Assembly (NCBI RefSeq): GCF_001194135.2 | Contig: NC_068982.1 | Span: forward strand, 162,043,656 to 162,097,529 | Source of the DNA: Octopus bimaculoides | Taxonomy: Eukaryota | Direction of reading: 5' to 3' | DNA: 53,874 bases | In this document: positions 5,113 to 53,700 of the stretch, one piece after another | Layout of the letters: every line of letters begins with the position of its first letter | Position numbering within the stretch: the stretch's first letter is position 1 | Made by a program: the position numbers and the translations under genes | Notes under the pieces: model-generated | What the model was told of the DNA's origin: nothing | Databases searched by the model: none | Seen by the model: only the letters and a program-made list of their open reading frames with translations

Positions 5113-5295
5113 GATAATTTAGAAGCTTTAGGTGAAGTACTTTTACAAGATAACTTTACAGTCTGGGAACCAAAGAACTTGATAAAGAAAGGAAGAGAGA
5201 GACGTATCTTCTTATTTGAGATGTGTCTCGTGTTTGCTAAAGAAATTAAAGACAGTAATGGAAAATCAAAATATATGTATAAAACCAAGTTACTT
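5113..5295 (+). CDS. TRIO: Trio exon: PH1 N-terminal half (DNLEALGEVLLQDNFTVWEPKNLIKKGRERRIFLFEMCLVFAKEIKDSNGKSKYMYKTKLL)
   Basis: Acceptor atttctttgtag| and donor CTT|gtaagt; 183 nt, phase 0-0. Matches Trio PH1 (LQESFQVWDPKTLIRKGRERHLFLFEMSLVFSKEVKDSSGRSKYLYKSKL). Confidence 0.97.
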
Positions 5296-7695
5296 GTAAG
5301 TATATTTCTGTTATTTTGATTTCTAACAATAGAGTTTCAATAAAAAAAAAAGTATTCTTGATAGAAGATTATTTCAATTTATATTTCCTTGTTGACAGAA
5401 ATTATATTTAATTTTCTTTTACCTCATTTAACAATGTTTTCTCATTTAGCTTGCAAGATCACAAACTTTTGGCTGTGATGAAAATGAGAGTGTGTGATAT
5501 TAGTGCATTTCTCAAAAACTTTAAGCGAAGTATTACATTCTTGTATGTGGTTTGCAAGAATCTCGATGTAAACTTGTGTGTTGAAACAGATCTTGTTGTA
5601 TATTGCCAATAATAAACACACACATACTGGTTCTGTCTCATTTCTTTATTATTCATTAATTGGTTAACTATTCAACCAATTAACTAATCAATTGTAGGAT
5701 TAATCATTCAGTTAACCAATCAATCAGTTATTGTTGTAAAGTCATTTTGTTGCCATTAGCGACATTCTTAAGCTGATCTGAAGTAGAGAGAGTATGTTAT
5801 TGAAGAGGTTGTGAATGGAACAAAAGGACTTTCTTCATCATCCTTATCATTTAATGTCCTCATTCCATCATAGATTGAGTGATTAACTGGTTAATTAGTT
5901 GGTTAAGTAGTCAACAATTATTAATCACTGATGGTAGTGAATTTGTAAATAAAGAAGTTTGTGATATTTATTTGGGCTCTTTATGTTCCGGTTTCAAATC
6001 TTGTCATGGTCAACTTCACCTTTTATGCATCTGGAGTTGATAAAGTAAAGTACCAATCAATTTAATCAACTAACCTCTCCTTCAAAATTTTAAGCCTTGT
6101 ACTTATAGGTACAAGAAGTAATTGTTAGTCATTAAAAGATTTTGTTGGAATTTCTCTTTTTCTTCAGCAATAACACAGAAATCAGATGTTTCTTTGCATC
6201 TGGTCATGGACCTGATATTATCAGTAAAGTTATTTATAGTATCATCTTTAAGGAACTTCTACTGATCAAAAATGTGACGCTTATAATTATTATCTCTATA
6301 TATACACACCAACACAGCAGGAAAATCTCAAGCTTCTGTTATTAAAATATATTTCTAGTATTTTCATTATCCCTTTATATGATAATGTATTTTGTGCTAG
6401 GATTTCATAGCAGTGAATACAAGAAACAAAAATGATGTATGAGATAATAGAGAAGAATCTTAAGAGTTACACTGTGAATGTGATGTTTTTTATCAGCCTT
6501 CCCTTCTGAAACCCTACTGAAAAGAATGTATGGAAAGCTTCTTTAGCTTTTATTTCTAGTTGGTTGTCATTTAACTCCAAATCAGTCCTGGTTGAGTAGA
6601 CTTATGGTCGTAAGCATTCCCCCTGTGACCATTTAGGAATATGTAGGACAACTTTATTTAATGTATCTTTTCCTTATTTAAGATGTTGAGTTCTGTAAGG
6701 TGATGGAGATTTGTCTACCATTTCTAGCATATTGAGCAACCGTACATTCTCCCTCCTTAGCTCCAATGTCATTGTTTTTCTTGTAGCAATGAGAAAGGGG
6801 AAAAGATATTTCAAGGAAAAAACTACTTGACCTAGATTAAACTGATTTGATTAAAGAGAGCAACCTGGACATTTGTCAGTTAGCTGGATGAAGAAAGAAG
6901 CAGCTGTAATATATACCTTTATGTAAAACAATGTTACCTCCTACTGATGGCTCTAAGAACCATTTTCTACTTCAGTCTTGTCTGATCTTACAAATAGTTT
7001 TTAAAGCAAGCAATCAACATTCTTGAAAATTGACTCCTTTTCTTCCTCCCATTTAGATACTGAAAGAAAATACATTTACATTTTTGAACATTATTTTCCA
7101 GTTTATGTAAAATATTCAGTATTACACAAGCCAGTTAATGGATAGAGTCATTTAGGCATCAACTAAAATACCTTGAGATATTTGTTCCAGCTTTCTGCAC
7201 TCAAATTACACCATGATCAGTTTTACCTTTCCTCCCTTTAGGGTTAATAAATATCACAGTTTAACTTTCTAGGCACCCCCTAAGACATGTTCTAGTTATA
7301 TACAAATCATAAACCAATCACGCACACTCATGTGTGGACACTCATGTGTGGACACTCATTAAATTGTTTCTACCCATTTTAATTTAGTTTTTGTCACAGA
7401 TTCCAACCTACAGGAGATCACCACTAGTCCTCTAATACCTACCTACTCCAAATTGTCCATTTTTAAAGTGTTTGCATTTAAATTACTATCCATTACCACC
7501 CCTTTATATAAGAGCCCAAAGTTAGTTCTATTCTAAACAATAGACTGATATTATACCAATAAAAGTTACTTTATACAAACCTTCACCAAATTCTTGATTA
7601 TTTCTAATTAATTTAACCATATAGGTTGTGCTGTTTTTGTTGTTAGAAATGTGGTTACTAATGGTTTAAATTCACTTTACTTTGTGTTTTTATAG

Positions 7696-9228: not shown

Positions 9229-9374
9229 GCATCATCACTGGATACAAAACAACAGTGGGTGAAAAAGATGAGAGAGTTAATTCAAGAACGTCTTGTCTAT
9301 ATGCACTCTGCCTTGAAAGAACCTCTAACAAAATCTGTCGCAGCACCAAAGATGTTTGTTAACAGAACAAGTCG
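9229..9374 (+). CDS. TRIO: Trio exon: PH1 C-terminal helix (ASSLDTKQQWVKKMRELIQERLVYMHSALKEPLTKSVAAPKMFVNRTSR)
   Basis: Acceptor ttggttatatag| and donor CG|gtaagt; 146 nt, phase 0-2. Matches Trio ASSIENKQDWIKHIREVIQERTIHLKGALKEP. Confidence 0.96.
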
Positions 9375-10770
9375 GTAAGTTCAGGCACATGAAAATGTGG
9401 TTTTATTCTCTTTTTTTTTTTTGTATACTTGTTAGTTGTATTAGAATACTAGAATCACTGCTAACACTAAACAGGGTACATACCTACCATGTCACAGTGA
9501 CCAGAGTACCATCCTACCTACCTACCTATCGTATCATAAACGACACAGTAACCAAAATACCTGCCTACCACATTGGAGCTGACATATTAAACATGGTACA
9601 CACCATATTACAACTGTGCCATAAATATGATACTTAGAATTTTACACTAGTTTGCAATTTCTATTCTGTTATAATCACTACATTCAGTTGTTAGTTAAGT
9701 AAATCAACTCTACCATCTTAATCTTGTCTTGGTTGGAAATTTGGTTCTAACTCACTATAGAGCTGGTTAGGTGCTAACTTCCTCAGCAGTTTACTGTTAT
9801 TTTTTGTGAAGAGTGGAGGCAAAATGTCATCAAATACAATACTACTGTAAGTTGGTTGTGTGTACTATAATGATGAGCTTTTCCACCATCACCCTGCCTG
9901 AAGTATTCATACAGCACTCTGTGGTGGAAGCTTCAAATTGTTAAATATTAAAATTTTTAGTGTTATCTAACCTACATCGGTAGAGAAACCTAGCTGTAAC
10001 AATGTTATCACTGGTACATGTCTTTGCTGGTGAATATGTTGAAGTAATATAGTTAAGCTAAAATCAGAATTATATATATTTTGCCATAAGAATTGAAGTG
10101 TTTATATAATATAAATAATATTGATATCTATGATGGAAAAAATTGGTGGACTAAGTCATCATTTAATGTCTGTTTTCCATGCTGGCATGGGTTAGACAGC
10201 TTGACAACAAATGGCAAGGCCAGGGGCCACACCAGGTTCCATAGTCTGTTTTGGCTTGGTTTCAACAACTAAGTGCCATTCTCTAACATCAGCCATATTA
10301 CAGAGAGTACTGGGTACTTTTTATGTGGCAAACAGTTTTCTGTGAGAAATTTAGTGGTGTTACAAACAAATATATTTCCTTTGTCTGGGATAATAGACAG
10401 TCGCGGATTTCATTGTATGGATGAACATAACTATATTTTTTTAGATACATTTGTTTTTTTGGAAATGGCTGCTTAATTGATTCTGCCGAGTAAAACGCTT
10501 AGTGGTATTTTATCCATCTTTACATTCCACTGAGGTCAGCTTTACCTTTCATACTTTTGAGGTTGATAAAATAAGTACCAGTTGAGCACTGGGATCAATC
10601 TAATTGACTATACCCCACTCCCTAACTTGCTGGCCTTGTGCCAAAATTTGAAGCCAATTTATCTCCTCTACTGTTAATTATCACATTGTTTATTCTTAGG
10701 TTGTAGATATAAAAGTTAAATTTTAAAATTGTTTGATTTTGACAGTGGAAATATTTTTACTATTTGTCAG

Positions 10771-19489: not shown

Positions 19490-19825
19490 CTGCCAGTCAC
19501 CTAGTCACCTACCGTTCTGGCAGACATATTAGCCAAATTGACTACATCCTTGCCAGAAAAAGGGAAAGACGGCTGCTTANNNNNNNNNNATATTAGCCAA
19601 ATTGACTACATCCTTGCCAGAAAAAGGGAAAGACGGCTGCTTATAAATGCCAAAACCTTCCCAGGTGAAGAATGTACCCTACAACATAGACTGGTAGCTA
19701 GCAACTTCAGGATCAGGGCTAAATGGATGCCCAGAAGACGACCAGCATGGAGGAGAAGGATCTGGAAGCTTAAAGATCCTGCGAATGGACAGAGATTTAG
19801 AGACGTATTACTTGAAGCAATTCGT
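19490..19825 (+). mobile_element. RTE LINE fragment, C-terminal part of the AP endonuclease domain
   Basis: Reads FRKPASHLVTYRSGRHISQIDYILARKRERRLLINAKTFPGEECTLQHRLVASNFRIR. The SQIDYIL and QHRLV motifs are typical of APE domains. Confidence 0.9.
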
Positions 19826-22800
19826 GCAATCTGATCCCAGTCTTTAGACTTAGAGGTCTGACCACAGTGGATCAGCAAACTAAAGATGGCTGCAGTGACC
19901 TGCAAGCTGAAGGTTTTTACATTTAAGCAGCCTTTTTATAGGTGAGTTCCCTTACAGGGCTGGGGAGCTCCACATACCCTGGAGTTGTTGGAAGTGTGTC
20001 AAAGTGGATACTGAACTGCCCAAGGAACTCCATGGTTGACTCCCGCTAGCCTTTTCCTTACACAAGGCAATAAGTAGAGGGATACAGAGGAGGATTAAAG
20101 GTAGGGAGTGAACCTGCAATACAACAGTGAGACAGTGAACAACCACCTTCGTTTGCTTTGCTAGCTCAAAGAAAAATCATTAGGAAACTTAGTTGAAAAT
20201 CAATATTGAGCTAATAAAACATTATTACTGGAAAGTTTTGTTGATGTTTTATTTACTGTAAAATACTTATTTCCAAAATTACTGGTCTGACAAAAAGTCA
20301 ATATTTTATACACGACAGGTTTTGTTATAGGACTGGATTACTCCAGTTGTCATACAGCATAATTGAACATATTTCTTATCTGTTCTTTATTACTTAATCA
20401 TTAGGATGGTAATCCTCCCTTACATCCAACTCAAATAAATTGCCATTTTTGGCAAACTCTATCTTATTTCCAATATTAGACAACAATTATTCTGTCTAAC
20501 ATTAAACATTGCCTTGTTTTTTCCCAATATTCTGTAATGTTATTGTTATATTTTAGATGACATGGCCTATATTTCCTCTTATTTCTGGTCCAGTGATTAC
20601 AGACTAGATTTCTAGAGTTATCTACTTGAGATATATACTGAGTCAATGATAGGTTTCTTATTAAAAGCTTCTATCTGAACAAAACTAGAAAGTGACCAGT
20701 CATTTTTACTGGCCTTTAATCTGCTATCACTGTTAGTTTGATTGCATTTCAAGACAAATTTGTACTTGTGATACCTTCTAACATTTGCTGATTGTCTATA
20801 TTGTTGATTATTGAACATTGTCAGTCATTCTTAAGTTGTGTATCAGTATAGAAGTAGCATCGTTTGTTAGCTGTTTCAGGGTCAACTGTATCCTTGTGAC
20901 ACCTTAGAGTATAATTTCTATTCAGTTTCTAGAAGAGAAATAACTAAAGTTTATACCTATTTCACCTAATCCACCTATATATTATTAACCTCCCCATTTC
21001 TCTTACCTCTAAGTGTGTGTATGCACACACATACACATATATTTTCCTCTACAATAAGAAAATGAGATAGATCTTAAGAACGGATGATCGGAGGAAGTGG
21101 GATTGTGGCTGACAGTATAGAAGGATAATATGTGATGTTAAGAGAGAGCATAGGTGATGAAATAGTTGAGGTAAGAGAGTGATGGTTGTCAATAAAGTAT
21201 TGATCTGAGGGATGGGGAGTAATGGCTAGCAGTACAGGAGGATAAATGGAGGGATGTACACCATATTATAACAAGACTACATTAGAAGATTAATGGTCTC
21301 TAAAAGATCGATATACTTTTTACCAGAGTGGAAGTACTAATTGCAATAGTGGAAGGTGCTGTTGATGGTAATGAATATAGGGGATCAGTTGGTAGAATAA
21401 AGAATATGTGTTGTAATTGGCATGGAAGAATCATCAAGGATTGTTTTTGTTATTTTTTAAGATACTGCACTTCTCTGAACAATAAACATTGAGTGGCTTC
21501 ACTTTTGAATCCCTCGATAAAATGGAGCAAAAGGGTAATTTTAACCTATCCCTCATTAATTTATCATCAGGCAATTTGTTCTCCTCCCATGTGATATGTG
21601 TGTCTCTACCGCCATACCTCCATCAGTCTCATAGCAATTAAAAATTTTACAGAAATGATCTCACTTCACAAAATTTGGTATGATAGTTTTCTGCAATAAC
21701 CTTGTCTGAGTTGGCAGCTTCACTATTGCTCAAAACACTGATTACCCAGAATACCCAACCCCTATTTTTAAAAGGTTTTGACCAAACACTTGCAAGTTTT
21801 AAATTCTACTGGTTTTGTATCACACTCAGCACTGCTACTACAAGCATCTCTCTCAAGTGCTTATGAAGAGATTTAGATTTTTACAAATGCTTCACTCACT
21901 GAATCACCAGCTAATTGTTTCTTTTTGAATAAAAGATTTTTCCTTAGACTGTGAACATGTAGTTTTTATACACACAGACAATATCCAACACCCATAACTC
22001 TGTTATATTAACTTCATTATTTAAAGCACTATTTAATCGATCAATCTTAATACCTTTCATACTTTTACTACAGATTAAAAGAGAGCTAATCTAACCAAGT
22101 GGCTTTCAGAGTTATGACCCCTGGGCTACACCTTTTTCCTTCGTTATCATATACTCAGTGTGATCTCATTTTTTTCACCTTGTTCAGAGTTCATTGAGTA
22201 GCTACTTTTGTTTTCAGTTAGATGTGAAAATATTTGAAGTTAAGTTTCTAGAAGTTCTAGGCCCACAGTTAGAACCTAAATTACATCTACACATTATATG
22301 GCTGTGTTATACTCACTACAAAATAAATATATAATAGTGTTATTATCATATGTCTTGTCTTAATTCTGCCATATAGCTGATAGGCCTTCTATGTTTTGTT
22401 TATTACATGTTTATTTTTCTGTTACTTTTCATTCTTTTTGGTTTTATATATTTTCCCATCTCCTCATAACTCATACTTTTATAGTTTGTCAAGAGAACCC
22501 CATCCTTTTTTTTACATTCCTCACTCTGTCTTTCATGTTCACTCATTTATACCCCAGCAGCTTTTTGCTGTCAACCAAATTTGCTGTCATCAAATTGAAC
22601 AATATTATTAATAAGGTGTCAAATTTGTGATGATTCTTGGTTGATAACTGTTGAAAGATGCATGTCTATGTGTTTTGCTTGCCTTTTTCCTTGTTTTCCA
22701 TACATTCCTTCTTCCTCCTTCTGTGCCAGGCTACATTTACTATCAAATGTACACACACACACACACACACAAATATATGCATACATCATCATCATCATTG

Positions 22801-24914: not shown

Positions 24915-26940
24915 ATTGTTTATAAATATGCTATGGTTTGCCATGATGAAAATATACATTTTTTTATTTGTCAAACTTCCTTTGTGTCAATGAATATTGA
25001 AGTTAGAATTTCTTGATAAAATATTACAGTATTGCACATGTCAAGCTGATTTGTTTTGGGTTAAATGGAAAAATTATTGATTTTCTTCCGCTGCTTCTAA
25101 GCTTTGAATGGACACAGTGGGAATTTATCTGTGTATTGTTGTTCATTTGTTGCTACTCTTTCCCCACAACAGTACTCCTTGCACCTGTTATTTATCTCCT
25201 TTCAATGTCTCCCCTACTGTGAGAGACATTTACTCTTATCTGTGATTATCTTCATTCTGTGAATTGATAAGGGTGCCTCCATACAGTCACTTGGTCCACT
25301 AGAAACAGCAGCCATATCTACCTCAAATCATAACCTTCTATCTTTTAAAAGGGACACATTGTATAATGATATTGTCTTAGATATCCTATGTCAGAGAACT
25401 AAAACAGTGTTTTCCTGGTCGGAAAACCTTTGGTCACTGTTTTGCTCACTAAACAGCTACGATAACAGCATTATGCTTCTTCTATGTTCTCCACTGTTAC
25501 CCCCTCTCTCATTCTCTCACTCACTGGTTCTAAGATATTCAGTCTAGCAGTGAAGATTCAGCACCACTGTTGTTCTCAGGTGTCTGTAGGAGTCTTCAGC
25601 CATCAATGTAATCTACTTGGCACCGGTACATGGAAAAGGAAATACACACCTCCTAGGTAGCTGCTTTATTTATTTTTACTTTCCTTACACGTATTGCAAT
25701 GCTTGTGTATGTATGTATGTATATATATNNNNNNNNNNNNNNNNNNNNNNNNNNNNNNNNNNNNNNNNNNNNNNNNNNNNNNNNNNNNNNNNNNNNNNNN
25801 NNNNNNNNNNNNNNNNNNNNNNNNNNNNNNNNNNNNNNNNNNNNNNNNNNNNNNNNNNNNNNNNNNNNNNNNNNNNNNNNNNNNNNNNNNNNNNNNNNNN
25901 NNNNNNNGAGTATGTATGGGATTTTTATTTTTTATAGATTTATTTTAAATTTTTGTGTATGTGTGTAGCATATGAGTATATATTGTGTGTATGTGTCAGT
26001 AAAAATATGTGTGTTTGTACGCGTGATAAGATGCCCCCAGTCTTCACTGTAAGATATATACACAGTGCCAAAGTTTGCCAGTATTATGTTCTGTGTGCAT
26101 GAGGCTGACCTGACAATCCATCAAACTCATGCCAGCATGAAAGAATGGACATAGTATCATGATGATGATGTGTGTGTGTATATCTATGTCAGTCTGTCTT
26201 ATATATATATGATATGATATGTTTAATATAGCCGTATGTATATATTGTATGTTGTGAGTTACATCACCACTCCTCTCAACTTCAATCTGTTTATCAGCAA
26301 CTCAGTGCTGTTGTGATTTTCTGAATCTAAATATTTATGGTGTCTGTTTGCTAAATGTCTGTTCTGGGACATTATTCTGCCTGCTGTAGTTACAAACAAG
26401 GTTTTACTGTACATTTATTTAGATGGCAGCTTGCAGAATATTAACACAAGTTTCAAAAAACAAACTAAAAGTGATTATTTAAACAAATTCATCTGCTTGT
26501 GTGTTATACACATGTACACATGAGTTTATATGTATATGTATATATATAAATATATGTGTGTGTGTGTATACATATAGACACACACACACACACATAAATA
26601 TGTATTTGTTAATTTGTATATTCATACACTTTCAGATACAAGGTGATTATGCTATCAAATATTTTTGTTATGAACATGTGTCTATATTTATTTTGCTTTG
26701 TATCGTTAATAGTTGTAATTACTTATCAATAATTTTTACCATTAAAAAACGCTTTTGTTGTTGCTATATGTTAAATGACATGATGATGATTTACTGTGAG
26801 GTTCAATATTTTGGCATTTCACATATAAACAATAAATGATAATAATCCAACATGGTACACACTCTCAGTAATTCTACTGTAAATCTTACCAGTTCCTTTT
26901 ACTGTGTTGTTATATCTCTCTCTCTCTCTCTCTCTCTGTC

Positions 26941-27121: not shown

Positions 27122-27540
27122 AAGTGGCTATATAGTAAGAAGCTTGCTTCCCAACCATGTGGCCCAGGGTTCAGTTCTACTGCATGACACCTTGGGCAAG
27201 TGTCTTCGAGCCAACCAAAGCCTTGTGAGTTGNNNNNNNNNNTGGTAGACAGAAACTGAAAGAAGCCCATTATATGTATGTGTGTGTGTGTGTGTGTATA
27301 TATATAGATACACACACGTGTGTGTGTCTTTGTGTCGGTGTTTGTCCCCCTGCTACCAATTGACAATGGTGCTAGTGTGTTTACGTCCCCATAACATAGC
27401 AGTTCAGCGAAAGGGACTGATAGAATAAGTATCAGGCTTTTAAAAAGATAAGTACTGGAGTCAATACATTCAACTAAAAAATTCTTCAAAGTGGTGCCCC
27501 AGCATGGCCACAGTCAAATGGCTGGAACAAGTAAAAAGAT
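27122..27540 (+). mobile_element. tRNA-derived SINE, near full length
   Basis: Degenerate A/B boxes (gtggctatatagtaag; gggttcagttct), core caccttgggcaagtgtcttc...ccaaagccttgtgagt, internal (GT)n, and 3' part ...gccccagcatggccacag...gaacaagtaaaaga. Related copies lie at about 17765-17930, 18310-18545, 24211-24390, 34912-35140, 41480-41680(-) and 44600-44700. Confidence 0.8.
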
Positions 27541-32220: not shown

Positions 32221-33045
32221 ACACCAAAATTGCTGCAATATAATCTCACTATATTCAAAGTATACTGAATTGTTAACTACTATGAACTCCAGTGATATCA
32301 GATTTGTCAATCAGTAAATAACCAAGTCTGCCTCACTTCTACATATCCTCATTGTCACTGCTTGTCTCAGTTCATGACTGTCATCACACTGGCCCATCTT
32401 TTGGTTCTCACTCCACCTCCTGGCTATCACTATGCTTTTATATGTCTTTACTGTTTCTTTGTGCACTGCACTAGGAAGCACTACGAAATGCAAATATGAT
32501 CTCACATGAGACTGAAGCACAACATAGCTGACATAATGGGCATGTTGTTTAACCCTTTTGTTATTATATTTCTGTTGAAATGCACCCTCTTCGAATATTT
32601 AAAAAATTAATGAAGAATAAAGTAATACACACAGAATAGATATATATGCATTTGCTTATGATACTTATGAGAAATAGAGACAGGTGTATAAAAAAAAAAA
32701 AAAAAAAAAAAGTAAATATATAAATAGATAAATATATGAATATATAGATATATCTGCCACATACCTATAATAAATGTAAAACAGATAGATAATATCAATA
32801 AAACTATATAAAGAGCATGCATATATATGAAGCAAACACATACATGAAACTTCATGGATGGCCATATTATGTCAACAACACAACTAATACAATCAGCAGC
32901 AGCAGTGGTGCCGATGATGGCAATAACAACAACAACAACAACCACAACCACCACAATGGCAACACTGTGAACGAACACACATACACAGAGGAATACAGGA
33001 ACTGTGTCTTTTTGTTTTTCTTCTCTGGTCTTGGGACAGCAGCAG

Positions 33046-33664
33046 AAAATTTCATGTTATCAGGTTAATAAAGACAGTTATTTTACTTTATTGTTGTATT
33101 TCAGGGTGGTCATTTTATTTTTTTTTTTTTTCCAAATAAAAACATGCACTATATATATATGTATGTATGTATATACACATATATATATATATATTTTTTT
33201 TTTTCTTCACTCATTTATTACTGTTTAATACCTGTCCATTGTCCAGAAATCTTTCGTCACACATCTGTGATCTCCATTCTGTTCTTCTAAGATGTGTATC
33301 CTTATGTGCGCATGCATTTGTGTCCTTGTTTATGTGTGTGCGTATACTTGTGTGTGTGTTTGGGGCTGAAGGGAACACACACACAAGCATACGCACGCAC
33401 AAACAAGGACACAAACGCATGTGCACATAAGGATACACATCTTAGAAGAACAGAATGGAGGTCACAGATGCGTGACGGAAGATTTCCAGACAATGGGCAG
33501 GCATTAAAATAACAGTAATAAATGAGTGAAGAAAAAAAGACAATATATATATAGTGCATGTGTTTATTTGGAAAAAAAAACAATAATAAATAAAATGACC
33601 ACCCCGAAATACAGCAATAAAGTAAAATAACATTGTTTTTATTAACCTGATAACATGAAATTTT
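33046..33664. repeat. 619-bp imperfect inverted repeat (fold-back) with a 13-nt loop
   Basis: Left arm 33046-33360 (aaaatttcatgttatcagg...cttgtgtgtgtgtt), loop tggggctgaaggg, right arm 33374-33664 (aacacacacacaag...cctgataacatgaaatttt). Confidence 0.97.
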
Positions 33665-36177
33665 AATGGGAAATATGGATTTAGATCACTTTAAAACAGA
33701 AAGTTTGTATGATAGAACTAGGGGTGATGCTCTCAGTTGGGTTGGTATCAAAAGGGTAGTGTTAACTTTGAAGGTTCTATTGAATTATAAGGACATCTAC
33801 CTTTTGTGTATCACATACTACTTAACTCAAGAAAAGTTCATCTTAAAGAGAGGGATTGAATCAGTGGTCCTAAATTAAGTGTTAAGTAGGGAGAATGAAA
33901 AGAGAGAGAGAGAGAGAGAGCTGAGCTGAGCTTTCAACAACCTCAGAAGCTATAATTAGAGTGAGGGAATGTGTTATGTTAGATAATAAGAATACAAGTG
34001 ACTGAACATTGAGTTAATGGAATTAACTGTTTAATGGTAAGAGTGTTGTCAGTGTCAATTCCAGCATGTTTAGAAGTTGTATTATGTTGATATGTTAGTT
34101 ATAATGGAATGAATGAATACTTGGGTGGGGGTAGAATTTTATTTGCTCAAAATAGCTTTGTTGGTTTGTTGAGTGAAATAACAACAGGACAGTGACTTTT
34201 ACACTTAGAAAGGTCTTGTCTTCTTTCACATATGTTTATCATGGTTGATAGTGGTTGACCCTGGTTGTTTAGACCTAAGTTAGCTCTTCAAAACGATCTA
34301 TGATGAAAGGCATTTCAGCCATAACCATCATGCTGGCTTTTCATTTTAATGTCTAGAACTACATTGTACAATGTATCATATCTTTTGTAAGATAGGGTAT
34401 GATTTCAGGGAAATTTTACTTGTGTTTCTAACAGATCAAGGAAATGAGTTGAAGCTCTCTCATTGACTTAGAGTTCCTGATGGTAGGAGTGAGAAGTGAT
34501 CTGATTGGCTGTTTGTGTACCTAACTTCAAGAATGGGTTGTGTGTACTGAATGTCACTGAATGGCATGGATATGGGAGTGGATAGCATCTAGGTGTATTG
34601 CATGTACCTGTTAACATATGTCAACTATATGGAATATAGTTTATATATAATGGGTACCATAGTGTTTGTGGTATGCTGAAAAATACAAGTATCTTAGTGA
34701 AGAATCTATTGAGTTGAAAAATATTTTATCTAATTTTATAAAAATACTTTATCTAATAAAATAAATAAATCAATATATAGGATTGTCATTTAATAGGAAA
34801 ACGTCCTTAGCTTTTATCAAGTTATTTCATGCTGGTTGGTAGGGATAATTAGCTAGCATTAAGATTAAGCAGTTGAAAGTATAAAGGTTGTTGGAGAAAA
34901 TATCAGTATAGGAGCAGACATGGCTGTGTGGTCAAGAAGCTTGCTGAACCTGAAACCCACTGATTTCATGTGGCACCATGGGCAAAGGTCTTTTTATAGT
35001 TCCAGGTCAACCAAAGCCTTGTGAGTGAATATAGTGAACAAAATTGTGTGGAAGCTAACCATGTACATTCGTGTGTTTGCTCCCCACTCTGCTACTTGAC
35101 AACCATTGTTAGTTTGTTTACATCCCCAGACAAACTGAAAGAAGACTATCCTCTCTTTTTCTCATATATACACATATATATATAGGTTTCAAGATTGTAA
35201 AAGATTCAAATTCTGTCTAATAAGAGGAAAAAATTAAGTTTCAATTTTCTATTCAATAATTTAAAATAATGCTTCATGAACTAAGAAATCCTGAAATAGT
35301 TTAGACATTGAGAAATAATTGATTATACAATAAGAACACAAAACTTAACTAGTAATAATTCAATTACATAAAGCATTGCGAATACTTTGAGTGAAAGGTG
35401 ATTTTCTAACCCATCTAGGAAGAGCAGAAATGTACCATCTAATTCATGCAGGTATGGAAAATGGGTGTAGAACATCTATGATGATTTTAATTCATCTGTT
35501 ACTTCTACGGTAGAGATATATCTTATCTGCCTTTGCAGAAGTCACAACACTTTCTTAGTTACTGAATGTTTTAAGATAAGGTGCTGGTCCTGCATGTTTC
35601 CTTCTTGAAAACTTACCTTTGAATAGCAATTCATTTTACCTTTCTCCTGACTCAGAATTATTCTAATGTGAGGATGTTAGAAATAATTCTCTGGAAAGAC
35701 ATATGCACAAAAGTGTAAATTCTTATTCTGTCAATCCTAAGATATATATGCATCCCTGTCATTATAAATGGTGCTACTTGCTTCAAATCTTTTGTGAAAA
35801 TATGTCTGACCATAGGGGATTATTACCTTGCTTGCTTATAGGTGAGAGAGGGCATCCAGCTATGAAAACCAATCTCAGTGTATTCTGTTTAACTCATACA
35901 AACATGGAAAAGGGGACATTAAAATGATGAGGAAAATTATGAAGAGGAAGATGATGACGATGCTGGTTGAATGGTAGACTTGTTACAGCATCAGATAAAA
36001 TACCTTGCAATATTTATTTTAGTTCTTGACAGTTTGAGTTCAAATCTTACTGAGGCTAAGTGTGCTTTTCATTACACGAGAGTCAGTAAAATAGTTAAGT
36101 GCTGGAATCAATGTAAATAATCTAACCCCTCCTCCAAATTGTACTAATATTTGGAACAAATTCCCTTTTTCTTCTAT

Positions 36178-36656: not shown

Positions 36657-37128
36657 NNNNNNNNNNNNNNNNNNNNNNNNNNNNNNNNNNNNNNNNNNNN
36701 NNNNNNNNNNNNNNNNNNNNNNNNNNNNNNNNNNNNNNNNNNNNNNNNNNNNNNNNNNNNNNNNNNNNNNNNNNNNNNNNNNNNNNNNNNNNNNNNNNNN
36801 NNNNNNNNNNNNNNNNNNNNNNNNNNNNNNNNNNNNNNNNNNNNNNNNNNNNNNNNNNNNNNNNNNNNNNNNNNNNNNNNNNNNNNNNNNNNNNNNNNNN
36901 NNNNNNNNNNNNNNNNNNNNNNNNNNNNNNNNNNNNNNNNNNNNNNNNNNNNNNNNNNNNNNNNNNNNNNNNNNNNNNNNNNNNNNNNNNNNNNNNNNNN
37001 NNNNNNNNNNNNNNNNNNNNNNNNNNNNNNNNNNNNNNNNNNNNNNNNNNNNNNNNNNNNNNNNNNNNNNNNNNNNNNNNNNNNNNNNNNNNNNNNNNNN
37101 NNNNNNNNNNNNNNNNNNNNNNNNNNNN
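36616..37128. other. (TA)n run leading into a 472-N assembly gap (36657-37128)
   Basis: Seen directly. Other gaps: 19580-19589 (10 N), 25729-25907 (179 N) and 27233-27242 (10 N). Confidence 1.
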
Positions 37129-47100: not shown

Positions 47101-47622
47101 CAAGGGTCACCAAACTATGGTCCATGAGGTCAGTTCATCCGGCCCGCCACCATACTGTACCTTTTGTGTAAGTACCTGCAATGAGAGTTCATTTGCCTCT
47201 GGTATGGCATCAGTGTTTGGAACAACTTATGTCTGTGAGCAAACATTTTCAAAATTGAAATATGTGAAGTCAGCACATCGAACAAAGTTGACTGATGAAC
47301 ATTTGAAAGCAATTCTCTTGATTGGATGCAGAATTTCTAAAGCAAATATTAATGATATCTTAAGCGCTAAACACCAGTTTCACAAATCTCACTAACTTTT
47401 TTTGCTGCCTAGTTTGTGAGATTCGGATATGTGCACACTGGATGTGATATGACTATCTTATTGCTAACATCGCCTTCTTTGATAACTATTTGGTAAGTAA
47501 ATATGTTGGTTGTCTATATTTGTTGTTTATTGACTGTATTGTACTGAACAAAATGGTTATGCAGCCTGCGTCCGTCATTCTCTCAGTTATCTGGCCCGCT
47601 GTGAAAGTTTGGTGACCCCCTG
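47101..47622 (+). mobile_element. Non-autonomous hAT (Buster/SPIN-like) element retaining the transposase C-terminal dimerization region
   Basis: TIRs caagggtcaccaaact / agtttggtgaccccctg. Perfect 8-bp TSD ATCTAAGG at 47093-47100 and 47623-47630 (nnnTAnnn). The ORF at 47117-47395 contains VFGTTYVCEQTFSKLKYVKSAHRTKLTDEHLKAIL. Confidence 0.92.
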
Positions 47623-52385: not shown

Positions 52386-52391
52386 TTGCAG

Positions 52392-52647
52392 TGTTCTTCA
52401 GATGTTACAGTTGTCATTGTTGACTATTCAGCTACATCTACATGGGACCTGAGTGTTCAGAAGGGTCAACAAGTAGAACTAATAGATGTTTGCCCTCCTG
52501 GACAGCCGGATTGGTGCCTTGTGCGTACATTACCTACTGAGGTGAAAGAGCCTTGTCAAGGTCTTGTTCCAATGTCTGCACTTAAACCGGTTCCAATTTT
52601 GAAAGTATCATCTGCTGCAGGGACGCGCACAAGTGCTGACTTAGATG
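52392..52647 (+). CDS. TRIO: Trio exon: first SH3 domain (CSSDVTVVIVDYSATSTWDLSVQKGQQVELIDVCPPGQPDWCLVRTLPTEVKEPCQGLVPMSALKPVPILKVSSAAGTRTSADLDG)
   Basis: Acceptor (ttta)n-ttgcag| and donor GATG|gtaagt; 256 nt, phase 0-1. SH3 motifs (DY..., PDWCLVR, GLVP) match Trio SH3-1 (TVVIHDF...ELTIRRGQTVEVL...PDWCLVRT...EGLVP). Confidence 0.95.
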
Positions 52648-52746: not shown

Positions 52747-52873
52747 GTAAAATGTCATTAACAGATACACAAACAATTCTTGTGGCATTAAAATTACAAA
52801 TGAAGATTTCATCCATAATTTGAAACATTTTCTCACCAGAGTTCTATGTTTAAGACATGAGGAATTATGTATA

Positions 52874-53700
52874 TTATTTACATTTGACGGATATTTGTCC
52901 TCGTCTTGTTATGAAGAAAAGAGAGGATGAAACCAATAAACTGTCCACAGTCTGTCTACCCTATGTGAAAGGCCTCTCCAAAAAGATACAAAAGATATGC
53001 GGCCCATATGACATCAGGACAGTATTCAAGAGTAATACAACACTTTGCAGATATCTCCTTCGAGTAAAACCACCAATAGAAGAGAATATGACCAAAGACT
53101 GCATGTACTCCATCTCATGCAGCTGTGGTAGGTTATACAAAGGTGAAACATGTCACCCCCTCAAAATAAGAGTAGACGAACATCGCAAAGCTGTGACATG
53201 AGGAGATATTGATAAATCGGGTATAGCTGATCATGTGTGGAAAAATGGAGACCACCTCCCCCTGTGAGATGAAGTTAAAATAATAGGCAGAGAACACCAC
53301 TGGAAAATATGAAAACTAAAAGAAGCAGCACATATGCTAGGACACAACAACCTCCTAAGCAGCCCAGTGCAGATATGAGTAGCATATGGGAACCGGTATT
53401 AAGGAAGGATAGGAAAATATTCGATTTATAAGCCCTAAAATTCACTCCATAATTGCCTGTGGGCATTTGGCATAGTGGTTAAGAGCGTGGGCTACTAATC
53501 CCAAGATTCCAAGTTTGATTCCAGGCAGTGACCTGAATAATAATAATGAAAACAACAACATCAAAAAATACCTTAGGAATGAGAACCCAGGTTCAAAATT
53601 TCAGCCAAAACATTGTGTTAACAACAAACAAGTTGAGGACAGATATCCGTCAAATGTAAATAATGAATTTTCTCACCATCTACTGATGGGACTTAATCAT
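52874..53700 (+). mobile_element. Penelope-like element 3' fragment: GIY-YIG endonuclease with inverted terminal segments
   Basis: VCLPYVKGLSKKIQKIC...DCMYSISCSCGRLYKGETCHPLKIRVDEHRKAV*GDIDKSGIADHVW shows the PLE GIY-YIG with a CxC...H...H pattern and in-frame stops. 52874-52910 is inverted relative to 53627-53663. Confidence 0.9.

What the first reader, a model, noticed from the sequence alone, without database searches (positions are those of the whole stretch)
33046..33664. 619-bp fold-back able to form a ~290-bp duplex with a 13-nt loop in the Trio pre-mRNA
Seen in sequence: the arms pair along their whole length, including a perfect block of about 38 bp (ctccattctgttcttctaagatgtgtatccttatgtgc). 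Nearly all substitutions between arms are transitions, giving A-C mismatches and G-U wobbles on the sense strand. I found no TSD and no transposase. The apex sits at a (GT)n/(AC)n junction, suggesting a local inverted duplication by template switching rather than a classical MITE. Established knowledge: coleoids show very extensive ADAR A-to-I editing, and long hairpins are ADAR and Dicer substrates. Inference: this is a hyper-editing sink or a long hairpin RNA producing endo-siRNAs.
Basis: partly seen in the sequence, partly recalled or inferred. Interest (0 to 1): 0.7.

Follow-up and report, generated by a model that had tools for sequence, protein, structure and literature searches.

The report
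Hyper-edited intronic hairpin in Trio
A 619-base stretch inside an intron of the Trio gene is a local back-to-front duplication that folds into a long RNA hairpin and carries clustered A-to-G RNA editing; this is a real but ordinary kind of editing target in cephalopods.

Summary
The fold-back is real. The arms are 33046-33360 and 33374-33664, with a 13-nt loop. They align with 265 matches and 15 mismatches, 14 of them transitions. The MFE is -410 kcal/mol (z = -56). DNA unitigs from three studies span the apex and the right edge at single-copy depth, so it is not an assembly artefact.

It lies on the sense strand of the roughly 43-kb Trio intron between the last GEF1 PH exon and the SH3 exon.

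It is not a MITE or foldback transposon. The loop and the outer 45 nt occur only at this locus, and there is no TSD. The arms are a mosaic of fragments of at least three dispersed repeat families, and both arms share the same private junctions and the same deletion. The outer edge falls inside a copy of one of those repeats. It is therefore a segmental inverted duplication.

Two RNA contigs from one run cover the unique loop and the right junction. Their 16 itemised differences are all A>G on the sense strand. Fifteen of the 16 sites are A-U paired and none has a 5' G. DNA shows no G at eight of them. This is ADAR hyper-editing.

Small RNAs, any "sink" function and the template-switch mechanism were not tested. 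The kind is well known and very common in octopus.

The parts
33046..33360 (+). Left arm of the fold-back, probably the inverted copy. It is T/G-rich on the sense strand.
   Evidence: Arm alignment, fold, and single-copy unitigs 33089-33177, 33180-33260 and 33302-33429.
33361..33373 (+). 13-nt loop/spacer TGGGGCTGAAGGG, flanked by (GT)6TT and AA(CA)5.
   Evidence: It is single-copy in DNA at >=91% identity (depth 35.4 in X1).
33374..33664 (+). Right arm, probably the parental copy. It is A/C-rich on the sense strand and carries most of the edited adenosines.
33150..33196 (+). (TA)n/(TATG)n and T-run expansion found only in the left arm. It forms a side hairpin and splits the duplex into an outer helix of about 100 bp and an inner helix of about 165 bp.
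   Evidence: Gap columns and the MFE structure.
33272..33309 (+). 38-bp perfect block that pairs with 33423-33460.
33346..33455 (+). Editing cluster 1: A>G at 33346 (the A.C mismatch site), 33401, 33427, 33429, 33430, 33435, 33444, 33450 and 33455.
   Evidence: Run X16, a 199-nt RNA contig over 33291-33487 that includes the unique loop and has 0 gaps. Every itemised difference is A>G.
33609..33625 (+). Editing cluster 2: A>G at 33609, 33611, 33619, 33620, 33621, 33624 and 33625.
   Evidence: Run X16, a 137-nt RNA contig over 33576-33708 that crosses the single-copy right junction. DNA shows 0 G at 33619-33625 (X1 0/64-108, X18 0/131-171).
33399..33460 (.). Fragment of dispersed repeat family 'F2' (about 400 copy-equivalents), mirrored in the left arm at about 33272-33333. 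Both arms lack the same 35-45 nt that other copies carry between 33457 and 33458.
   Evidence: Depth, loose ends and inserted letters. The mirrored loose end at 33274 is.
33556..33619 (.). Fragment of dispersed repeat family 'F1' (60-160 copy-equivalents). It ends at 33619/33620, where other copies continue with TATNTTTCAACACAC...
   Evidence: 18 contigs in X1 and 14 in X18 with loose ends at 33619.
33651..33757 (.). Copy of dispersed repeat family 'R' (300-1600 copy-equivalents). It begins inside the right arm and runs into the right flank, so the fold-back edge at 33664 is internal to it.
   Evidence: Other copies (122 contigs in X1, 127 in X18) continue upstream of 33651 with a conserved CATTATTAAGCTGGTGTTTGGAACATAAAT.
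5113..5316 (+). Stop-free stretch holding a Trio GEF1 PH-domain exon.
   Evidence: PDB 7sj4 residues 198-264, E = 1e-34 for the joined query.
9229..9375 (+). Stop-free stretch holding the exon for the end of the Trio GEF1 PH domain. This is the upstream limit of the host intron.
   Evidence: 7sj4 residues 288-332.
52386..52600 (+). Trio/kalirin SH3 exon (approximate bounds). This is the downstream limit of the host intron.
   Evidence: (Pfam SH3_2). (kalirin 1u3o E = 7.5e-11; TRIO 7sj4 residues 379-436 E = 6.4e-8).

Best explanation
This is a single-locus segmental inverted duplication of about 290 bp. It lies in the long intron of the Trio gene between the last GEF1 PH exon and the SH3 exon. 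A stretch of intronic sequence that was already a mosaic of decayed transposon fragments was copied in reverse orientation next to itself, leaving a 13-nt spacer at a (GT)n/(AC)n tract. When the intron is transcribed, the two arms pair into a long AU-rich hairpin with helices of about 100 and 165 bp. ADAR enzymes bind this dsRNA and deaminate many paired adenosines on the sense strand (hyper-editing). The most likely consequence is only that the duplex is loosened and the RNA is discarded with the intron. It is then a by-product substrate with no specific role for Trio. Shown: the structure, its single-copy status, the mosaic origin of the arms, the intronic sense-strand location, transcription, and the A>G clusters. 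Inferred: ADAR as the enzyme, the fold-back or template-switch route of origin, and the absence of a dedicated function.
For: Structure. The element is real and single-copy: unitigs across the apex and the right edge sit at flank depth in three DNA studies, the loop has depth 35 at >=91% identity, and the outer 45 nt are covered only by about 3.4x, accounted for by the two arms' own unitigs plus one or two low-depth contigs of uncertain origin. The arms copy each other rather than being two separate insertions. They share the F1/unique junction at 33619|33620, share a deletion of 35-45 nt relative to F2 family members, and the edge at 33664 lies inside a copy of repeat R whose other copies continue differently. 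No TSD is present. Gene and strand. Editing: two RNA contigs of run X16 cover the locus-specific parts, and their 16 itemised differences are all A>G on the + strand. DNA shows zero G at 33401, 33455 and 33619-33625. If these were DNA-type differences, in which A>G makes up about 25%, then 16 of 16 has P of about 2e-10. Fifteen of 16 sites are A-U paired and one is the A.C mismatch. The 5' neighbours are U7, A7, C2 and G0, which fits the known ADAR dislike of a 5' G. Left-junction words are also present in a second RNA study (X31). Literature: octopus CNS has more than 1 million hyper-editing sites and an exceptionally high fraction of loci forming long near-perfect dsRNA (PMC5625713).
Against: The editing rests on one RNA run and contigs of depth 2.5-3.7. 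Seven of the 23 differences in those two contigs were not itemised by the tool, so their type is unknown. No matched DNA from the same animal was available. The sampled raw RNA reads (6% of two runs) gave zero coverage of the unique parts, and four other runs gave only paralogous contigs. A diverged paralogous apex copy exists, as one contig in organism A (depth 23, indels in the loop) and a 385-nt contig in organism B. A very small family of fold-backs therefore cannot be excluded. 'No function' is an inference from how common such elements are, not a test.
Confidence: 0.75

Rival explanations
1. It is an ordinary foldback transposon or MITE, mobilised as a unit by a transposase acting on its terminal inverted repeats.
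For: Long inverted arms with a short loop. The inner parts of the arms match hundreds of dispersed sequences in two species. The palindromic end AAATTT could hide a palindromic TSD. One or two diverged apex-containing contigs exist elsewhere.
Against: The loop and the outer 45 nt are single-copy. The dispersed matches belong to at least three different families, which end or continue differently at 33274/33457-33460, 33619 and 33651. The arm terminus lies inside a copy of repeat R rather than at an insertion site. There is no flanking direct repeat and no other copy in the window.
Confidence: 0.06
2. It is a hairpin-RNA (hpRNA) locus. Dicer cuts the long hairpin into 21-23-nt endo-siRNAs, which act on transcripts carrying the same repeat fragments.
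For: The hairpin is long and near-perfect. Its arms are homologous to repeat copies that are expressed elsewhere, for example the abundant RNA paralog over 33272-33340.
Against: There are no small-RNA data at all. Hyper-editing, which is seen here, generally antagonises Dicer processing (established knowledge). The intronic location points to a nuclear, short-lived RNA.
Confidence: 0.08
3. It is a functional cis-element of Trio. The intronic hairpin would recruit ADAR to raise editing at nearby sites (an editing inducer element) or would modulate splicing of the PH-to-SH3 region.
For: It lies in a neural gene of a heavily editing lineage. The right junction, and probably both arms, are present in a second species at about 95% identity.
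Against: The nearest exons are about 24 kb upstream and 19 kb downstream. Arm divergence (K2P 0.056) is about equal to the between-species divergence of the flank (about 5%), as expected for neutral decay. Mismatches split 7 G.U to 7 A.C, so pairing is not preferentially preserved on the sense strand.
Confidence: 0.05
4. It is an assembly or library artefact (a chimeric palindrome), or the A>G differences come from a paralog or allele rather than from editing.
For: Palindromes are a classic artefact. The window has N gaps elsewhere. The RNA contigs have low depth. The sampled left-junction words are held by only 4 of at least 9 DNA samples.
Against: The apex-spanning unitig is identical in DNA runs of 2015, 2022 and 2025 at single-copy depth, and an RNA contig also spans the apex. 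All 16 itemised RNA differences are of one type on one strand, and eight of them are absent from DNA.
Confidence: 0.04

Closest known systems
Hyper-edited intramolecular dsRNA formed by neighbouring inverted repeats in introns and UTRs (for example inverted Alu pairs in primates, and the octopus hyper-editing clusters of Porath et al. 2017, PMC5625713).
   Same: A long near-perfect duplex within one pre-mRNA. Clustered A>G on the transcribed strand at paired adenosines, with 5' G avoided. Non-coding and made of repeat-derived sequence.
   Different: The two arms are not two independent insertions of one repeat family. They are a segmental inverted duplication of a mosaic of several repeat fragments, with only a 13-nt spacer, so the element is a single tight hairpin.
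Approximately palindromic transposons that are edited on their own (for example the Harbinger-derived repeat of Xenopus discussed in PMC5625713), and foldback elements or MITEs.
   Same: A self-complementary unit of a few hundred bp that folds without needing a partner.
   Different: No family of full-length copies, no TSD, and termini that lie inside another repeat. The membership features were tested and not met.
Inverted duplications formed by fold-back priming or replication template switching (PMC3907307, PMC11724301, PMC10766183).
   Same: Inverted copy adjacent to its template. A short unique spacer at the apex. A simple-repeat tract at the apex that could supply microhomology. An outer breakpoint at an arbitrary position.
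   Different: Those cases are large human CNVs with spacers, or very short (about 5-34 bp) insertions at yeast breaks. Here the tract is about 290 bp, it is old (at least 5% diverged and shared with a sister species), and the mechanism is inferred only from the product.
Drosophila hpRNA loci that yield endo-siRNAs, and GU/AC-rich miRNA hairpin families (Rfam mir-466, mir-297, MIR4239).
   Same: Long or GU/AC-rich hairpin geometry. There are sub-threshold covariance-model hits at the apex on both strands.
   Different: All Rfam scores are far below the gathering thresholds (65.6 vs 100, 46.7 vs 85, 39.9 vs 90). No small-RNA evidence exists.

Membership tests
ADAR hyper-edited dsRNA substrate | Long, near-perfect intramolecular duplex in a transcribed region | tested here: met
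   265 of 280 aligned positions are complementary, MFE -409.7 kcal/mol, z = -56. The element is intronic on the sense strand of Trio. RNA contigs cover it, and words of the left junction are in a second RNA study.
ADAR hyper-edited dsRNA substrate | Clusters of A>G RNA-DNA differences on one strand that are absent from genomic DNA | tested here: met
   All 16 itemised differences in two locus-specific RNA contigs are A>G on the + strand. DNA shows 0 G at 33401, 33455 and 33619-33625. Limits: one RNA run, depth 2.5-3.7, no matched DNA from the same animal, and 7 further differences not itemised.
ADAR hyper-edited dsRNA substrate | ADAR sequence and structure context (paired A or A.C mismatch; 5' G disfavoured) | tested here: met
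   15 of 16 sites are A-U paired and 1 is the A.C mismatch. The 5' neighbour is U7, A7, C2, G0, against a background of 19/38/28/17. The sample is small.
ADAR hyper-edited dsRNA substrate | Editing depends on ADAR | not testable with these tools
   This needs an ADAR knock-down or in-vitro deamination.
MITE / foldback transposon | Many dispersed copies of the whole element sharing both termini | tested here: not met
   The loop and the outer 45 nt are single-copy. The dispersed matches are fragments of at least three families with different continuations. There is no second copy in the window.
MITE / foldback transposon | Target-site duplication flanking the terminal inverted repeats | tested here: not met
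   The flanks are gcagcag| and |aatggga, with no direct repeat. A hidden palindromic TSD (AT, AATT or AAATTT) cannot be formally excluded from the sequence alone.
MITE / foldback transposon | Element ends coincide with an insertion boundary | tested here: not met
   Repeat R runs through the right edge (33651-33757). 122 and 127 paralogous contigs continue upstream of 33651 with a conserved sequence of their own.
Fold-back / template-switch inverted duplication | Arms are copies of each other, including private junctions and deletions, with a short unique spacer | tested here: met
   Shared F1/unique junction, shared 35-45-nt deletion in F2, 13-nt single-copy loop.
Fold-back / template-switch inverted duplication | Microhomology at the breakpoints, and a pre-duplication state in an outgroup or allele | tested here: inconclusive
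   The (GT)6/(CA)5 tracts at the apex could be the cause or just part of the copy. Organism B appears to have the right junction and left-arm-state contigs already. No empty allele was seen.
hpRNA / endo-siRNA locus | 21-23-nt small RNAs from both arms | not testable with these tools
   No miRNA-seq or small-RNA run could be listed. A k = 31 index cannot hold such reads.
Known miRNA precursor families (Rfam) | Score at or above the family's gathering threshold | tested here: not met
   Best hits: MIR4239 65.6 vs 100, mir-466 46.7 vs 85, mir-297 39.9 vs 90. The hits occur on both strands.

The most novel reading that the evidence does not exclude
The hairpin is not a passive by-product. It could act as an ADAR-recruiting element that tunes editing or splicing of the Trio transcript. 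Alternatively it could be a cephalopod hpRNA locus whose siRNAs target the expressed paralogous repeat copies. The near-exclusive transition divergence between arms (14:1) might then reflect a process tied to the dsRNA or R-loop state rather than ordinary mutation.
Probability: 0.06. Interest if true: 0.6.

Novelty: new member of a known kind. Interest (0 to 1): 0.25.

Why it matters
It is a clean, well-bounded example of how an ADAR substrate arises. A local inverted duplication of old transposon debris produced it, not two independent repeat insertions. It sits in a neural signalling gene of a lineage known for extensive editing. As a single-copy locus with a unique loop and unique junctions, it could serve as a convenient reporter for measuring hyper-editing in vivo. 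Otherwise it adds one more case to a class already counted in the hundreds of thousands in octopus, and it does not change any current view.

Tried and rejected
- The first two read-laying runs failed: one on a filter and one with no answer.
- Raw RNA reads from two 2026 runs (6% sampled) gave zero depth on the unique parts, so no read-level editing rates could be obtained. 99% of the laid reads ran on into unrelated sequence, meaning they came from paralogs.
- Four further runs (X14, X17, X19, X20) gave only paralogous contigs, so the editing was not replicated.
- A 120-nt RNA contig with G at 33346 looked at first like site-selective editing of the A.C mismatch. It leaves the locus after 33353, so I treated it as a paralog.
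- An abundant RNA variant over 33272-33340 includes A>C and G>C changes and is therefore an expressed paralog, not editing.
- The protein search with the SH3 exon returned one unnamed 55-aa hit. The gene was identified through PDB sequences instead.
- Exact-product look-ups for two ORFs inside the element found nothing.
- No tRNA-like SINE head was found.
- Rfam gave only sub-threshold generic hairpin hits.
- The joints 33003/33005 to 33375 were considered as a possible pre-duplication allele. I rejected them as low-complexity (TG/AC) misalignments of other loci, because X1 carries the apex at full depth.
- Selection on pairing was considered and rejected: the G.U to A.C split is 7:7 and arm divergence roughly equals species divergence.

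Full report
**1. The observation**

Window 33046-33664 is a 619-nt fold-back.
- The left arm (33046-33360) aligned against the reverse complement of the right arm (33374-33664) gives 265 matches, 15 mismatches and 46 gap columns. Fourteen of the 15 mismatches are transitions.
- The loop is 13 nt, TGGGGCTGAAGGG, and is flanked by (GT)6TT and AA(CA)5.
- The quoted 38-bp perfect block is 33272-33309.
- On the + strand RNA the mismatches are 7 G.U, 7 A.C and 1 A.G.
- RNAfold gives -409.7 kcal/mol for the + strand (z = -56) and -399.8 for the - strand (z = -49). The MFE has 284 pairs, two-thirds of them A-U.
- Most gap columns are a (TA)n/(TATG)n/T-run expansion found only in the left arm (about 33150-33196). 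That stretch folds on itself, so the duplex is an outer helix of about 100 bp and an inner helix of about 165 bp around a side hairpin.
- It is the only long inverted repeat in the window. No N gap touches it.

**2. It is real DNA and single-copy**

Logan unitigs from three DNA runs of the same organism were examined. They come from studies dated 2015, 2022 and 2025.
- They contain 33302-33429 (across the apex; seen in X1 and X2) and 33572-33708 (across the right edge; seen in X1 and X5). They show no differences, at a depth of about 30-35x in X1 and about 60x in X5, matching each run's unique flanks.
- At >=91% identity the loop has single-copy depth, 35.4 in X1.
- An assembly artefact is therefore very unlikely. 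Long reads were not available.

**3. Gene context**

- On the + strand, stop-free stretches at 5113-5316 and 9229-9375 match the PH domain of human TRIO GEF1 (PDB 7sj4 residues 198-264 and 288-332; E = 1e-34).
- The stretch at 52386-52600 is an SH3 domain. Its closest matches are kalirin (1u3o, E = 7.5e-11) and TRIO (7sj4 residues 379-436).
- The fold-back therefore lies in the roughly 43-kb intron between these exons, and the + strand is the sense strand.

**4. What the arms are made of**

When reads were laid at 80% identity, the inner parts of both arms were covered by hundreds of copy-equivalents in organism A and in a second organism B. The ends of the arms and the loop were not. Higher-resolution lays show a mosaic.

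| Family | Position in right arm | Approx. copy-equivalents | How it ends or differs |
|---|---|---|---|
| F2 | 33399-33460 | about 400 | Its members carry 35-45 nt (TAAGTGGAGCAAGAGCACACACGAAGACGGAAAGTGTCGCTGA) between 33457 and 33458. Both arms lack this stretch. The mirror break in the left arm is at 33274. |
| F1 | 33556-33619 | 60-160 | It stops at 33619. There, 18 contigs (X1) and 14 contigs (X18) continue with a conserved sequence that this locus lacks. |
| R | 33651-33757 | 300-1600 | It starts 14 nt inside the right arm and runs into the flank. 122 contigs (X1) and 127 contigs (X18) continue upstream of 33651 with their own conserved sequence. |

- The outer 45 nt (33620-33664) are covered at only about 3.4x. 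This depth is accounted for by the right arm's own unitig, contigs with the left-arm state, and one or two low-depth contigs of uncertain origin.
- Both arms thus share private junctions and a private deletion, and the edge of the inverted repeat is internal to a repeat copy.
- This is what a segmental inverted duplication of pre-existing intronic sequence looks like, with the right arm plus flank as the parental arrangement. Neither two independent insertions nor a mobile foldback element would look like this.
- No TSD is present. No tRNA-like head was found.

**5. Age**

- Organism B holds the right junction at about 95% identity: 7 differences in 136 nt, or 5 in 101 nt.
- It also holds contigs with the left-arm state at 33637. 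The duplication therefore probably predates the split of the two species. One of those contigs may be a paralog, so this point is suggestive rather than proven.
- The K2P distance between arms is 0.056, about the same as the species divergence. This fits neutral decay.
- The 14:1 transition bias exceeds a 2:1 expectation (P = 0.02). Five of the 15 differences are at CpG sites. The remainder of the bias is unexplained.

**6. RNA**

RNA run X16 (organism A, contigs) contains two contigs that cover locus-specific sequence.
- A 199-nt contig spans 33291-33487 across the unique loop with no gaps. Its itemised differences are A>G at 33346, 33401, 33427, 33429, 33430, 33435, 33444, 33450 and 33455. 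The run's summary of changes reads only "A>G:9".
- A 137-nt contig spans 33576-33708 across the single-copy right junction. Its itemised differences are A>G at 33609, 33611, 33619, 33620, 33621, 33624 and 33625. DNA depth for G at 33619-33625 is zero in both species.
- All 16 itemised differences are therefore A>G on the sense strand. If they were DNA-type differences, in which A>G makes up about 25%, this would have P of about 2e-10.
- Fifteen of the sites are A-U paired in the MFE, and 33346 is an A.C mismatch. None has a 5' G, against 17 of 102 adenosines in the background.
- This is the signature of ADAR hyper-editing.

Caveats:
- The evidence comes from one run at depth 2.5-3.7.
- Seven further differences in these two contigs were not itemised by the tool.
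- No matched DNA from the same animal was available.
- Raw RNA samples and four further runs gave no locus-specific coverage.
- A second RNA study does hold 2 of 5 sampled words of the left junction, so the region is transcribed there as well.

**7. Comparison with what is known**

- Hyper-editing of long dsRNA formed by inverted repeats in non-coding RNA is the main activity of ADARs across Metazoa.
- Octopus CNS alone yielded more than 1 million hyper-editing sites. The fraction of octopus loci able to form long near-perfect dsRNA is exceptionally high, at 4.4e-3 (PMC5625713).
- One 619-nt hairpin in 54 kb is of that order.
- The origin resembles fold-back or template-switch inverted duplications (PMC3907307, PMC11724301, PMC10766183), but only the product is seen here.
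- Rfam gives only sub-threshold hits to GU/AC-rich miRNA hairpins, on both strands.
- Small RNAs could not be tested.

**8. Verdict**

- It is incomplete on the repeat-derived make-up of the arms.
- It is untested on template switching, on a "sink" role and on siRNAs.
- The element is a new member of a well-known and abundant kind. Interest is low to moderate.

Noticed in passing
window 33006-33090: The five sampled 31-mers of the left junction are all held by four DNA samples of organism A (X6, X45, X13, X7). None is held by X8, X5, X2, X3 or X9, even though X2 carries the apex unitig and X5 the right-edge unitig (X8, X3 and X9 were never laid). There may be a haplotype difference (SNPs or an indel) at or near the left breakpoint.
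   Followed up: no
window 33272-33340: A paralog of repeat F2 with 33289 A>C, 33292 A>G, 33310 G>A, 33322 G>C and 33332 A>G is abundant in RNA (depth 92-459 in four contig runs, and about 90% of raw RNA reads there). It is rare in DNA, so one copy of this repeat sits in a highly expressed transcript elsewhere.
   Followed up: partly
window 33272-33457 (contigs of X18 and X1): A 385-nt contig of organism B (depth 52.6) and one contig of organism A (depth 23) cross an apex like this one at about 80% identity, with a different loop. There may be a second, diverged fold-back copy, or a fast-evolving orthologous apex.
   Followed up: no
window 33651-33757: This is a copy of a dispersed repeat with 300-1600 copy-equivalents in two species, and it is also present in RNA contigs. 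Its family could not be named because no repeat library was available.
   Followed up: partly
window 33046-33664, arm differences: Fourteen of the 15 arm differences are transitions, and in 11 of them the left arm has A/T where the right arm has G/C. Only 5 are at CpG sites. The bias is stronger than a 2:1 expectation (P = 0.02) and is not explained.
   Followed up: partly
window 47117-47395 (+): This ORF has a weak match to the hAT C-terminal dimerisation domain (E = 5.9e-4, below the Pfam cut-off). It is probably a decayed hAT transposase remnant.
   Followed up: no
window 52857-53201 (+): This 114-aa ORF lies just downstream of the SH3 exon. Its motif ...YSISCSCGRLYKGETCHPLKIRVDEHRK... looks, from memory, like a GIY-YIG endonuclease domain of a Penelope-like element. 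Pfam gave no hit.
   Followed up: no
window 19538-19834 (+), next to the N gap 19580-19589: The ORF fragment (...IDYILARKRERRLLINAKTFPGEECTLQHRLV...) resembles, from memory, the end of a LINE apurinic-type endonuclease domain. Pfam gave no hit.
   Followed up: no
window 19580-19589, 25729-25907, 27233-27242, 36657-37128: Four assembly gaps (runs of N) lie in the same intron. The largest is 472 N, next to a (TA)n tract.
   Followed up: no
window 32896-32960: A (CAG)n/(CAA)n/(CCA)n microsatellite lies about 90 bp upstream of the fold-back. It is strongly over-represented in both RNA and DNA reads, and those reads continue as a CAA-type repeat.
   Followed up: no
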